A DNA stretch of 57,473 nt, taken from Octopus bimaculoides. Taxonomy: Eukaryota. The stretch is from contig NC_069003.1 in NCBI RefSeq assembly GCF_001194135.2, positions 25,354,372-25,411,844 of the forward strand. Reading direction: 5' to 3'. A model generated the notes under the pieces. It worked only from the letters and a program-made list of their open reading frames with translations. It was not told the DNA's origin and searched no databases. The translations under genes and the position numbers were made by a program. Shown piece after piece: positions 9,912 through 14,800 of the stretch. The stretch's first letter is position 1; each line of letters begins with the position of its first letter.

Positions 9912-11122
9912 TGTATATGTTATATCTATTATATATATGTGTGTATTTATATCTGTTATATATATATATGTATATATATTTATTTGTATGTATATCTGCT
10001 ATATATATATATATATGTATGTATATCTGTTTTATATATACGTTAAGTTAAATTCAACACTATCAGTATTATCCTGTGTTTGATAAAATTATTTCTTTAT
10101 ATATATATATGTATATCTGTTATATTTATATATGTGTGTGTATATCTGGGAATGTATCACTGTGTTTCACTGTGTTTACCAGTTTGAAAAAGCCACTGTT
10201 GTATCAAAAAGTGGGAAATAGAGAGATTCAATAAATACATCTTCATTCTTTTTCATTTTTTTCTTTCTTTACAGAATTCAAGAACCAAATCTCTGGGTTC
10301 AGTCCTTGTCGTATTTTGCAATGAAAGAAGACAACTGTAAAACTTACCTTATGGAAGTTCTTTCTCATATCCTTTGGAGATTTCATGCTTTAACAAGTGT
10401 TTTTATTTGACACCATGAGAAATGTGCAGAAGCATGATTCCCTGTTGACAGCAGACTACATATGCTTTTGGGATGATAATACTGAGGGGGGCAAGATGTT
10501 TTATGAGACACAGTGGCTGTGAGGTATGAAGGGTTGATTACTGGACACATAATCAGAAGTTCAAATTTTACTGCAACACTATCATCATCATCATCATCGT
10601 TTAACGTCCGCTTTCCATGCTAGCATGGGTTGGACGATTTGACTGAGGACTGGTGAAACCGGATGGCTACACCAGGCTCCAATCTGATTTGGCAGAGTTT
10701 CTACAGCTGGATGCCCTTCCTAACGCCAACCACTCCGAGAGTGTAGTGGGTGCTTTTACGTGTCACCTGCACAAAGGCCAGTCAGGCGGTACTGGCAACG
10801 GCCACGCTCAAAATGGTGTATTTTATGTGCCACCAGCACACATGCCACGGGCACAAGTGCCAGAAAGGCGACGCTGGGCACAGGTGCCATCCCGATTTCA
10901 CTTTCGCTTGCCCCAATAAGTCTTCGCAAGCTGAGTTTCATGTCCAATGAAGGAGACGACATTGGCATGGGNNNNNNNNNNNNNNNNNNNNNNNNNNNNN
11001 NNNNNNNNNNNNNNNNNNNNNNNNNNNNNNNNNNNNNNNNNNNNNNNNNNNNNNNNNNNNNNNNNNNNNNNNNNNNNNNNNNNNNNNNNNNNNNNNNNNN
11101 NNNNNNNNNNNNNNNNNNNNNN

Positions 11123-11165
<43 letters not shown>

Positions 11166-11527
11166 TTGAGTATTTATTTACTATGTTTTCTATGTTTGTT
11201 TTCTTATCTCTCTTTCTCATACAGCACACTCACAGACATTTGTAGGTTGAAACAATCATAGTTAAATAATATAGAACTCTACATATGCATTTGATGCATT
11301 GATTATTAAATCTGAAACCTAATTGAACAAAGATAACTTCATCATCACTCTATCTATCTATCTATATCCATCTACCTCTATCTACAGGGTGTCCACGAGG
11401 TCTGGGTACATGGAGTAAATAAAATCATAACATAAACAATTAAATATAAGAAATAATAATTTCTTAAAGTATGTGTTAATCCCCATGTACCCAGACTTTG
11501 TGGACACCCTGTATATGTCTCTCTATC

Positions 11528-11558
<31 letters not shown>

Positions 11559-11780
11559 CTATNNNNNNNNNNNNNNNNNNNNNNNNNNNNNNNNNNNNNN
11601 NNNNNNNNNNNNNNNNNNNNNNNNNNNNNNNNNNNNNNNNNNNNNNNNNNNNNNNNNNNNNNNNNNNNNNNNNNNNNNNNNNNNNNNNNNNNNNNNNNNN
11701 NNNNNNNNNNNNNNNNNCTCTATCTATATCTGTCTGTCTGTCTCTCTATCTATATCTGTCTGTCTGTCTCTCTATCTATA

Positions 11781-11811
<31 letters not shown>

Positions 11812-14800
11812 GTCTGTATCTGTTTGTCTCTCTATCTATATCTGTCTGTCTGTCTCTCTATCTATATCTGTCTGTCTGTCTCTCTATCTATATCTGTCTG
11901 TCTGTCTGTCTCTCTATCTATATCTGTTTGTCTGTCTCTCTATCTATATCTGTCTGTCTGTCTCTATTCATTTTCTGACTTGTTAATTGCCTTACTCACT
12001 TCCATCCTTTGTCCTATTTCAATTCTTCTTTCATGCTGGATACATCACCATTTTCCTCATCTTTATTTCTCTCTCACCATACAGCATTCGAGCACATCCA
12101 CTTATCAACTTGTTTGTTTTGTTTTTAATATTCTATCTCGTTGTCTTTTTTATATTAGAAATGTTCCTCCTAAGGCGGCGAGCTAGCAGAAACGTTAGCA
12201 TGCTGGGCAAAATGCTTAGCGATATTTCGTCTGCCGCTACGTTCTGAGTTCAAATTCCGCCGAGGTCGACTTTGCCTTTCATCCTTTCGGGAGTCGATTA
12301 AATAAGTACCAGTTACGCACAGGGGTCGATATAGTCGACTTAATCCATTTGTCTGTCCTTGTTTGTCCCCTCTGTGTGTAGCCCCTTGTGGGCAGTAAAG
12401 AAATAAGAAATGTTCCTCCTATATCATAGGATGGAATATTTTGCAATCTTCATCGCTTTGTTGGGTTAATACTCATAAAACTTCAGTTTACATTGCATAT
12501 TGGAAAGTAAATTATGTTGACTGGACATTTCCCTTTCCATGTTGCTAACTAATATTGGCTATTTCAGGTTGTTTAGACCTAGGCCACATTTGATTGAAGA
12601 AGACCTTTAATTAAATGCATTCCAGCCATGACCATCCTATATTTTATGTGAGAGAGTATATTGTCCAATATGTCCTATTTTTAAGATTGCAGACTGTGAT
12701 TTGAGAGATATTTGGCTACTATTTCTGGTAAGTTACACAACTGCCGAGAGAAGCTCTCATTGATTTGGATTATCACAGATATGATAAGTAAGTAAAATGA
12801 AAATGGCTTGACTGGAATTTGAACTTGTATCATATACTTTGCTGTTCAGAGATGACCTTTACCTTTTAACTCACTCGCACCAAACATAGTATGCCGCCAG
12901 ATTTTTGAAAACCTGTGATGCACTTTGACATCCCTTACAGAGCATTGCTGCACCATTTTACCGCTGCATTAAAGTATATCTTTGTTGTTAGTGACCTTGT
13001 TATCAAGAAAAACCTTCCTTAACACTGTTCAAATATCGACAAGAAGAACCTGTTACCTCCGTTGCTTGTCATCCAGACACTGGCCAACAACTCTGCTGCT
13101 ACACTGTCAGTTGTAAAGGTAAGTTCCTTTGTTAAAGGGTCATTTCAGTTAGCAATTGTTGTTATTGTTTAGCTAAATGGTTCTCAACCAGGATCCATAT
13201 GGCCCTTGAGGGTCCTTATAAGATTTTGTTGTTAAAATTTATTACCAATAAATTGCTTATACTTCTGAATACAATTCCTAATAATATTTAATATTAAAAA
13301 GATAATAGANNNNNNNNNNNNNNNNNNNNNNNNNNNNNNNNNNNNNNNNNNNNNNNNNNNNNNNNNNNNNNNNNNNNNNNNNNNNNNNNNNNNNNNNNNN
13401 NNNNNNNNNNNNNNNNNNNNNNNNNNNNNNNNNNNNNNNNNNNNNNNNNNNNNNNNNNNNNNNNNNNNNNNNNNNNNNNNNNNNNNNNNNNNNNNNNNNN
13501 NNNNNNNNNNNNNNNNNNNNNNNNNNNNNNNNNNNNNNNNNNNNNNNNNNNNNNNNNNNNNNNNNNNNNNNNNNNNNNNNNNNNNNNNNNNNNNNNNNNN
13601 NNNNNNNGGTGTGTTTACGTCCCCATAACTTAGCGGTTCGGTAAAAGAGACCGATAGAATAAGTACTAGGCTTACAAGGAATAAGTCATGGGGTCGATTT
13701 GCTCGACTAAAGGCGGTGCTCCAGCATGGCCACAGTCAAATGACTGAAACGAGTAAAAGAGTAACCACTGGTTTAGGCAAAGGTCAATTCTAGTCTAGTA
13801 GACATTATCAAAGAGGTTCCAACTTTGACCATCTCATCTGTTATTTTCAGATATTGTATAGCTAAAGTGACCTTTTATTTTATAAAACAATATGTAATAC
13901 AAAGGGTATTTGGCTACTCCTTTTAGCAGATTCTGTGATTGCTTTTGTTAGCTCAATATATATCCTGTTGTTTAAATCCAGGACAGCTCTGACGAAGCAG
14001 CAGACACATTCAAAAGCATTCTAGTCATGACCGTCACTTTTACTCATATAATATATGCAGGACTACATTATCTGTGTCCCTCAGACATAGCACATCTCAG
14101 GTCATGGTGTTCTTATCTACTGCCATCTTGAGTTACCAGTTAGCAGTTTGTTGCTGTATTCTATCAAGACAAAATTACAGAAGTTTTATAACATATAGGA
14201 GTTGTTCTTTTTATCTCCAGATACAGTTTTGTGTCATTTAGGAAACAAATCATTAAGAAAGAAAATGTCTTATAACCCACTCACTGTGAATTTCATCTTC
14301 TTGTAAGGGATTCCTTGTATTCTCCACGCACATGACAGGATTTAAATCCACTATCTGTGTCGCCTGGTTTGATAACACTGACACCTCAACCAGATCTGTG
14401 GGTGCTTTTAGCATAGTCTACTCTGTCACAAACATTCAGATTGGCTATTTGGTCTGAGTATATCTTCTTCACATCAGTCTTAGAGGCTCTGCAAGAGGTC
14501 ATGGCTATTTCCCTTCCTCATCTCACTAAGCCTTTAAAAATAAAATACAAATTATCAATTATGCAATAATCCCAGCTGCTACCCACAGCAATAAATTGTA
14601 TGCTTCCTATTTGGAATTAGATGAACTGAGCCAATGAAAGTTAAGTTTTTTTCTTTTCTGTATTTTTTATCCCTTAACCCATTACCTACCAGTGATCTCA
14701 TATGAGATCACTTAAAAATTACAAATTTCATAATTATCTGTCAATATTTACACATATCTAACCTTTTTGCTATATCTACTAGGTATATTTCTCTGATATT

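What the first reader, a model, noticed from the sequence alone, without database searches (positions are those of the whole stretch)
10367..13032. U12 (minor spliceosome) intron in VPS11 with a non-canonical AT-AA terminus
Seen: VPS11 homology stops at ...GTTCTTTCTC, followed by ATATCCTTTG (exact U12 donor consensus RTATCCTTT). The next exon has no AG acceptor; instead TTCCTTAAC (U12 branch consensus, 13015-13023) is followed by 9 nt ending ...TTCAA and then ATATCGACAAG. This join gives LS-H-IDKKNL, ungapped against remembered human LK-H-IENKNL. Established: AT-starting U12 introns normally end in AC, other ends are rare, and minor introns can be rate-limiting. Inference: splicing of this intron gates the coiled-coil and RING half of a core HOPS/CORVET subunit; retention reads HILWRFHALTSVFI* and truncates the protein. 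ATATC occurs at both the intron start and the exon start, so aligners can slide the junction and GT-AG annotators probably mis-model it. An in-frame AT-AC solution exists (AC at 13022-13023, adding 3 aa), but that AC is part of the branch motif itself.
Basis: partly seen in the sequence, partly recalled or inferred. Interest (0 to 1): 0.85.

Follow-up and report, generated by a model that had tools for sequence, protein, structure and literature searches.

The report
Real AT-AA minor intron in VPS11
The VPS11 gene in this window carries a real, very old minor-spliceosome (U12-type) intron that ends in the unusual letters AA instead of AC; RNA reads show it is removed exactly as predicted, but it belongs to a rare class that is already known.

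Summary
The VPS11 exon ends at 10366. The intron starts with ATATCCTTT at 10367. TTCCTTAAC lies at 13015-13023. The intron ends in AA at 13031-13032, and the next exon starts at 13033.

- **Splicing:** 21 raw RNA-seq reads from three runs and assembled transcripts from three further runs (two species) join 10366 to 13033. No read uses another acceptor and no retention was seen.
- **Genomic AA:** DNA contigs from three studies, raw DNA reads and three related species all carry AA, so it is not a sequencing error.
- **Register:** none of the six cut registers compatible with the mRNA gives GT-AG, GC-AG or AT-AC. Only AT-AA carries the U12 donor.
- **Age:** the same codon position and phase holds a U12 GT-AG intron in Nematostella and a U12 AT-AC intron in the annelid Ridgeia. 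The Ridgeia gene model mis-handles it. The intron is absent in Priapulus, a sea cucumber and a gar. It is therefore ancient, and its last letter drifted from C to A in this lineage.
- **Gaps:** both assembly gaps lie inside the intron and affect only its length.

AT-AA is the commonest non-canonical minor-intron end, so this is a new member of a known kind. The idea that it "gates" VPS11 expression is untested.

The parts
10275..10366 (+). VPS11 exon upstream of the minor intron. It encodes (G)IQEPNLWVQSLSYFAMKEDNCKTYLMEVLS plus the first base of the His codon, and ends in phase 1.
   Evidence: Translation. tblastn to VPS11. RNA depth is confined to 10274-10371. RNA contigs X1, X2 and X12 cover it.
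10367..10375 (+). U12-type 5' splice site ATATCCTTT, a 9/9 match to the RTATCCTTT consensus.
   Evidence: It is the only match in the window. It is unchanged in three related species, whose first intron difference is at +11.
10367..13032 (+). The minor (U12-type) AT-AA intron, 2,666 nt as written. That figure includes 306 N, and much of the interior is repeat-derived.
   Evidence: The join 10366|13033 is seen in 21 raw RNA reads and in 3 RNA contigs. Very high multi-copy read depth over 10503-10906, 11109-11209, 11513-11613 and 12220-12420 marks dispersed repeats.
10972..11122 (.). Assembly gap (151 N) inside the intron.
   Evidence: It is bridged at the transcript level by cDNA joins.
11563..11717 (.). 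Assembly gap (155 N) inside the intron.
   Evidence: It is bridged at the transcript level by cDNA joins.
13015..13023 (+). U12 branch-point sequence TTCCTTAAC. The presumed branch adenosine is 13022, which is 10 nt before the intron end.
   Evidence: It is the only match in the window. Distance computed. It is unchanged in three related species.
13031..13032 (+). The non-canonical 3' terminal dinucleotide AA.
   Evidence: It is identical in DNA contigs from three studies, in raw DNA reads and in DNA contigs of three related species.
13033..13118 (+). VPS11 exon downstream of the intron. It holds AT of the His codon followed by IDKKNLLPPLLVIQTLANNSAATLSVVK, and is followed by a canonical GTAAGT donor at 13119.
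   Evidence: Translation. RNA depth is confined to 13033-13119. The loose end ACTATATTGTC... leads to the next exon at 15119.

Best explanation
This is an authentic, ancient U12-dependent (minor-spliceosome) intron of the AT-AA subtype. It interrupts the His codon of the conserved EVLS-H-IDKKNL segment of VPS11, between the PEP5/VPS11 clathrin-repeat region and the coiled-coil/RING/VPS11_C part.

Proposed mechanism (inferred from established U12 biology, not assayed here):
1. The U11 snRNP, and later U6atac, recognise ATATCCTTT at 10367.
2. U12 snRNA pairs with TTCCTTAAC at 13015-13023 and bulges A13022 as the branch point.
3. As is usual for U12 introns, the 3' splice site is chosen mainly by its short distance from the branch (10 nt) rather than by its identity. 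The spliceosome therefore cuts after AA at 13032, because no AC or AG lies at a usable distance.

The ancestral intron at this site was already U12-type. In this lineage the last intron base changed from C to A without loss of accurate splicing. The intron is removed efficiently in the tissues sampled.
For: **Junction**
- 4+10+7 raw RNA reads in runs X21-X23 run through 10371 and continue GACAAGAAGAACCTG....
- RNA contigs in X1, X2 and X12 (X12 is species B) join 10366|13033 with no extra letters.
- Read depth is zero in 10374-10450 and in 12930-13028.

**Non-canonical termini**
- All six registers compatible with the mRNA are non-canonical. Only register 0 (AT-AA) starts with the U12 donor.

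**Genomic AA is real**
- DNA contigs of three studies and raw DNA reads show no differences over 12930-13170.
- Species B, C and D differ at many nearby intron and exon positions, but not in the donor, the branch motif or the terminal CAA.

**U12 signals**
- The donor and the branch consensus are each a unique exact match in the window.
- The branch-to-3'ss distance is 10 nt.
- The stretch before the 3' end (aagaaaaaccttccttaacactgttcaa) has no polypyrimidine tract.

**Orthologues, same position and phase**
- Nematostella: TCCC|GTATCCTTTT...TTCTTGACCattgcaAG|ACATCAAC.
- Ridgeia: GCTC|ATATCCTTTC...ACCTTGACaatgtggcAC|ATATAGAC.

**Literature**
- AT-AN minor introns are an established class (PMC8280824).
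- AT-AA introns are catalogued in human, mouse and Arabidopsis, and the same intron can be AT-AA in one species and AT-AC in another, as in MSH3 (PMC1557818).
- AT-AA is the commonest non-canonical minor-intron terminus (PMC10639083).
Against: - Dependence on U11/U12/U4atac/U6atac was not tested. It rests on sequence signals and orthology.
- mRNA reads cannot tell the exact cleavage register within the 5-nt ATATC ambiguity. AT-AT (register +2) gives the same mRNA.
- The branch point was not mapped.
- Only about 6% of each raw RNA run was read, from one study, so low-level or tissue-specific retention or alternative acceptors cannot be excluded.
- The intron interior has two gaps.
Confidence: 0.93

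Rival explanations
1. The AA is a base-call or assembly error and the intron is really a canonical AT-AC (or AT-AG) U12 intron.
For: AT-AC is by far the usual partner of an AT donor. The assembly is gappy.
Against: Contigs assembled independently from DNA runs of three studies, plus raw DNA reads, match the window with zero differences over 12930-13170. Three related species with 4-8% divergence nearby also carry CAA at 13030-13032.
Confidence: 0.01
2. The junction is a reverse-transcriptase template-switching artefact across the 5-nt direct repeat ATATC, not a real splice.
For: Non-canonical 'introns' flanked by short direct repeats are a classic artefact signature. ATATC is present at both ends.
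Against: Every read and contig crossing the site shows the join: 21 raw reads in three runs and contigs in three further runs, over several studies and two species. None is unspliced. The join restores the conserved VPS11 reading frame. Orthologous U12 introns sit at the same codon phase in Nematostella and Ridgeia. The ATAT at the start of the downstream exon simply encodes His-Ile.
Confidence: 0.01
3. The intron is U12-type but is cut in another register, for example AT-AT (donor 10369, acceptor 13034), which yields the same mRNA.
For: Registers 0 to +5 are indistinguishable in mRNA. AT-AT is the second commonest non-canonical minor terminus in animals (PMC10639083).
Against: In register +2 the intron would begin ATCCTTTGG, so the invariant 5' splice-site consensus would be shifted by 2 nt relative to the cleavage site. 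The Nematostella orthologue has no sliding ambiguity and is cut in phase 1 after the first base of the His codon, which equals register 0 here. Register 0 in Ridgeia gives a perfect AT-AC.
Confidence: 0.04
4. It is a non-canonical intron removed by the major (U2-type) spliceosome.
For: Rare U2-dependent AT-AC introns exist (PMC1557818 abstract).
Against: The 5'ss and branch site are exact U12 consensus matches at the diagnostic short spacing. There is no polypyrimidine tract, and U12-type orthologues sit at the same site.
Confidence: 0.02

Closest known systems
AT-AA (AT-AN, 'A-type') U12-dependent introns, e.g. human RASGRP4 and MSH3 (Sheth et al. 2006, PMC1557818; de Wolf et al. 2021, PMC8280824; Larue and Roy 2023, PMC10639083)
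   Same: It has an ATATCC donor, a TCCTTAAC-type branch site close to the 3' end, and a terminal AA. The 3' nucleotide switches between AC and AA in orthologues, as in human versus mouse MSH3.
   Different: It lies in a different gene and lineage. Here the AA state is shown to be fixed across four related species, and the ancestral U12 state is traced to a cnidarian and an annelid.
The known U12 AT-AC intron of human VPS11 (chr11:119068011-119069195; GTCTTTGGAG|ATATCCTTCG...CTCCTTGAC...GCAC|ATATGG; Dataset of PMC8280824)
   Same: Same gene family. It is an A-type minor intron, also phase 1, and it is strongly retained when CENATAC is depleted.
   Different: It is at a different position. By my recollection of the human protein sequence it lies in the N-terminal beta-propeller (..SLVFG|DMEG..), about 680 codons upstream of the site studied here. 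That part of the gene is outside this window. The one vertebrate locus examined, a gar, has no intron at the His-Ile site.
Orthologous introns in Nematostella vectensis (L006 10560-13102) and Ridgeia piscesae (L009 9138-9509)
   Same: Identical codon position and phase, a U12 donor and a branch motif 10-11 nt from the 3' end.
   Different: The termini are GT-AG in Nematostella and AT-AC in Ridgeia, against AT-AA here.

Membership tests
U12-type (minor spliceosome) intron | A 5' splice site matching /RTATCCTTT directly at the exon end. | tested here: met
   ATATCCTTT at 10367-10375 is the only match in the window, and it sits at the RNA-defined exon end.
U12-type (minor spliceosome) intron | A branch-point sequence TCCTTRAY about 10-15 nt upstream of the 3' splice site, with no polypyrimidine tract. 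| tested here: met
   TTCCTTAAC at 13015-13023. A13022 is 10 nt from the intron end. The upstream stretch is purine-rich.
U12-type (minor spliceosome) intron | The intron is actually removed at these boundaries in RNA. | tested here: met
   21 raw junction reads and 3 RNA contigs show the join, and no alternative acceptor is used.
U12-type (minor spliceosome) intron | The intron position and type are conserved in orthologues. | tested here: met
   U12 GT-AG in Nematostella and U12 AT-AC in Ridgeia at the same phase-1 site. The intron has been lost in Priapulus, Apostichopus and gar.
U12-type (minor spliceosome) intron | Splicing depends on the U11, U12, U4atac and U6atac snRNPs. | not testable with these tools
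   This needs knock-down or in vitro depletion experiments.
AT-AA subtype of minor introns | The first two intron bases are AT and the last two are AA in the genome, not through sequencing error. | tested here: met
   DNA contigs of three studies, raw DNA reads and three related species agree. No canonical register is possible.
AT-AA subtype of minor introns | The exact chemical cleavage register (AT-AA rather than AT-AT and the others within the ATATC ambiguity). | tested here: inconclusive
   mRNA cannot resolve the six registers. Register 0 is favoured by the donor consensus and by orthologue phase.
VPS11 (HOPS/CORVET core subunit) | The PEP5/VPS11 clathrin-repeat region followed by a RING-H2 and the VPS11 C-terminal domain. 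| tested here: met
   Pfam PF23356 (E 8e-28) and PF12451 (E 3e-16) on the spliced 253-aa product. It is 64% identical to Priapulus 'vacuolar protein sorting-associated protein 11 homolog', E 3.5e-110. No RING model passed the threshold, although the CSICNHPLE...HSYHQHCFECY...CPVC motif is visible.

The most novel reading that the evidence does not exclude
The AA terminus has been fixed across several related species. It might make this old A-type intron an especially weak, factor-dependent (CENATAC-like) step. Tissue- or state-specific retention, which puts a stop codon after 14 codons, would then tune the supply of full-length, RING-bearing VPS11 and hence HOPS/CORVET activity.
Probability: 0.07. 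Interest if true: 0.55.

Novelty: new member of a known kind. Interest (0 to 1): 0.3.

Why it matters
**For annotation.** GT-AG-based gene finders will break VPS11 at this point. The orthologous AT-AC intron is demonstrably mis-modelled in the public Ridgeia gene set, where an exon is skipped and a cryptic AG is used. The correct join here is 10366|13033.

**For minor-intron biology.** This is a cleanly documented case of one orthologous U12 intron in three terminal states: GT-AG in a cnidarian, AT-AC in an annelid and AT-AA in this lineage. It has been lost repeatedly elsewhere. In the window's lineage the AA end has stayed stable and is accurately used. This fits the view that the U12 3' splice site is set by distance from the branch point rather than by its last letter.

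It does not reveal a new mechanism.

Tried and rejected
1. Laying RNA reads on the whole intron was swamped by dispersed repeats, and the real joint was not among the 15 listed. It was recovered from the contig-pieces table and then from loose ends on short repeat-free stretches.
2. The 59-aa protein search found only three short ORFs from unnamed metagenome contigs. These proved to be animal VPS11 loci without the intron.
3. A literature search for 'VPS11' plus 'minor intron' found nothing. 'VPS11' plus 'U12' gave only irrelevant papers. The human VPS11 minor intron was found in a supplementary dataset instead and lies at a different site.
4. Two intron-poor, fungal-like VPS11 loci (L010, L011) have no intron here and say nothing about deeper ancestry.
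5. I looked for the GOSR2 neighbour seen next to VPS11 in L001 and L004, and for the last VPS11 exon, in the window. There were no significant matches.
6. The alternatives of sequencing error, reverse-transcriptase artefact, the AC acceptor at 13022-13023, and U2-type splicing were considered and rejected (see the rival explanations).
7. The N-terminal part of the gene, where the human U12 intron lies, is outside the window. Whether this species also keeps that intron could not be checked.
8. The organism is coded in the run tables and was not identified.
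Full report
**1. What is in the sequence**

- A VPS11 exon runs from 10275 to 10366. It follows a normal ...tttacAG acceptor and ends ...GAAGTTCTTTCTC.
- The next bases are ATATCCTTTG.
- About 2.6 kb downstream, TTCCTTAAC lies at 13015-13023. 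It is followed by ACTGTTCAA, which ends at 13032.
- ATATCGACAAGAAGAAC... follows. This opens an 86-nt exon (13033-13118) that ends at a normal GTAAGT donor.
- The two exons translate to ...CKTYLMEVLS and IDKKNLLPPLLVIQTLANNSAATLSVVK.
- A spliced 253-residue product built from the exons in the window hits Pfam TPR_PEP5_VPS11 (E 8e-28) and VPS11_C (E 3e-16).
- That product is 61-68% identical to named VPS11 proteins of Priapulus, Nematostella, a gar and a sea cucumber.
- The window holds only the C-terminal third of the gene, from about human residue 587 onward. This alignment used my recalled human sequence.

**2. The gaps**

The two N runs flagged by the scan's program (10972-11122 and 11563-11717) are both inside the intron. 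Whether the two sides belong together was tested with RNA. Single assembled transcripts and single reads run from the upstream exon straight into the downstream exon. They also continue to the exons at 8213-8287 and at 15119 onward. Order, orientation and frame across the gaps are therefore established. Only the intron length (2,666 nt as written, including 306 N) is uncertain.

**3. Is it spliced as predicted?**

Yes.
- In three raw RNA-seq runs, 4, 10 and 7 reads match through 10371 and then continue GACAAGAAGAACCTGTTACCTCCG..., with full agreement among the reads of each run.
- Read depth drops to zero at 10374-10450 and is zero over 12930-13028.
- Transcript contigs in runs X1 (1,593 nt), X2 (733 nt) and X12 (1,080 nt, a second species) place 10366 next to 13033 with nothing in between.
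- The AC at 13022-13023, which would add CSN to the protein, is not used. No retained-intron read was seen in this sample, which was about 6% of each run.

**4. Can the termini be canonical after all?**

No. ATATC occurs at both the intron start and the downstream exon start, so six cut registers give the same mRNA. Their termini are AT-AA, TA-AA, AT-AT, TC-TA, CC-AT and CT-TC. None is GT-AG, GC-AG or AT-AC. Only register 0 puts the invariant U12 donor /ATATCCTTT at the cut.

The genomic AA is not an error. Contigs assembled from DNA runs of three studies, and raw DNA reads, match 12930-13170 without a single difference. Three related species differ from the window at 9-20 positions in that 241-nt stretch. 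All of them keep the branch motif and the terminal CAA. They also keep ATATCCTTTG, with the first intron difference at +11.

**5. Is it U12-type?**

The evidence available here is as follows.
- The donor is an exact 9/9 consensus match and the branch site is an exact 9/9 match. Each is the only copy in 57 kb on both strands.
- By my estimate, the chance of both single copies falling at exactly these places is about 1e-9.
- The bulged branch adenosine (13022, from the established U12:branch-site pairing) lies 10 nt from the intron end.
- There is no pyrimidine tract before the 3' end.
- No AC or AG lies at a usable distance. The nearest are 3 nt and 18-24 nt from the branch, and all are out of frame.

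This pattern is what is expected if the minor spliceosome picks the 3' site by distance. Dependence on the minor snRNPs themselves could not be tested.

**6. Orthologues**

| Organism (locus) | State at the EVLS-H-ID site |
|---|---|
| Nematostella (L006) | GTCTTGTCCC\|GTATCCTTTTGC ... gaTTCTTGACCattgcaAG\|ACATCAACCGG; a U12 GT-AG intron in phase 1 of the same His codon, branch 10 nt from the end |
| Ridgeia, annelid (L009) | GTCCTTGCTC\|ATATCCTTTCAC ... ttACCTTGACaatgtggcAC\|ATATAGACAAG; a canonical U12 AT-AC intron at the same site, branch 11 nt from the end |
| Priapulus (L005), Apostichopus (L008), gar (L007) | no intron |
| Three unnamed animal contigs from ENA metagenomes (L001, L002, L004) | no intron |
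| Two intron-poor, fungal-like loci (L010, L011) | no intron |

The deposited Ridgeia protein (P0015) reads ...CKKFGYLDNVAHIDKNN.... It lacks the upstream exon and starts the downstream exon at a cryptic AG inside the intron.

The simplest history is a U12 intron already present in the cnidarian-bilaterian ancestor. It was lost several times, its subtype switched between lineages, and the last base changed from C to A in the lineage of the window.

**7. Comparison with what is known**

- Minor introns with AT-AN ends are an established class (Levine and Durbin 2001 and Dietrich et al. 2005, as cited in PMC8280824).
- Sheth et al. list AT-AA introns in human, mouse and Arabidopsis. They also list cases where the same intron is AT-AA in one species and AT-AC in the other, such as MSH3 (PMC1557818).
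- Larue and Roy find AT-AA to be the commonest non-canonical minor terminus in both animals and plants. They also report molluscs as relatively rich in minor introns (PMC10639083).
- Human VPS11 is itself a minor-intron gene. Its AT-AC intron (chr11:119068011-119069195) was strongly retained on CENATAC depletion (supplementary data of PMC8280824).
- Its flanks (GTCTTTGGAG|...|ATATGG) place it in the N-terminal propeller, by my recollection of the human protein. It is therefore not the orthologue of the intron studied here.

**8. Function**

A retained intron would add HILWRFHALTSVFI and a stop codon. That would remove the coiled coil, the RING-H2 and VPS11_C, or trigger mRNA decay. This is a plain consequence of the sequence. 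The further idea that the cell uses this as a gate has no support in the data: retention was undetectable against 21 junction reads. A-type minor introns do tend to be spliced less efficiently and to depend on CENATAC in human cells. The idea is therefore testable, but it is speculative.

**9. Verdict**

It is a well-supported new example of a known, rare class, with some value for annotation and for the evolution of minor introns. It is not a new mechanism. Interest 0.3.

Noticed in passing
L009 9052-9594 (Ridgeia piscesae, GCA_025642075.2): The public gene model (P0015) skips the exon encoding DSNLWIQALAYFARKEENCKQQIIEVLA. It starts the next exon at a cryptic AG, giving YLDNVAHIDKNN. The real structure is a U12 AT-AC intron from 9138 to 9509.
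   Followed up: yes
window 10503-10906, 11109-11209, 11513-11613, 12220-12420: These intron segments collect hundreds to thousands of RNA reads, with many variants, loose ends and 'goes back' joints. They are copies of highly expressed dispersed repeats (SINE-like elements and microsatellites), not VPS11 expression. The assembly gaps abut two of them.
   Followed up: partly
window 12385-12814: Run X1 (labelled 'RNA?') has low-depth contigs (about 3.5-4, against 15 for the exons) over unique intron sequence. None reaches either splice site. This could be pre-mRNA, DNA carry-over or an unrelated transcript.
   Followed up: no
window 20859 / 25302 (..HFHNE | LDRVQDGF..): VPS11 in this window has a further intron of about 4.4 kb that contains an 812-N gap. 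It splits a segment that is a single exon in L001 and in the gar. The splice sites were read by eye only (GTACAG donor, ...tatAG acceptor).
   Followed up: no
L007 5518 / 6087 (Atractosteus spatula): The gar has no intron at the His-Ile site, but it has one 12 codons downstream (..NLMPPLL | VVQTLAH..). Intron positions around this segment therefore differ between vertebrates and the other animals examined.
   Followed up: no
window 17192-17293: The RING-H2 exon reads VHFLCEPHSYHQ, where other animals have VHFLCQHSYHQ or VHFLCGHSFHQ. That is one extra residue between the Cys and His ligands. It was not checked against RNA.
   Followed up: no
L001 258-443; L001 and L004 downstream of VPS11: The unnamed animal contigs from ENA metagenome assemblies carry a complete, compact VPS11 that lacks both the intron studied here and the one at the human U12 site (..GRGQIILSDHEG.. 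is contiguous). A GOSR2-like SNARE gene lies downstream of VPS11 in them, and it was not found in the window.
   Followed up: partly
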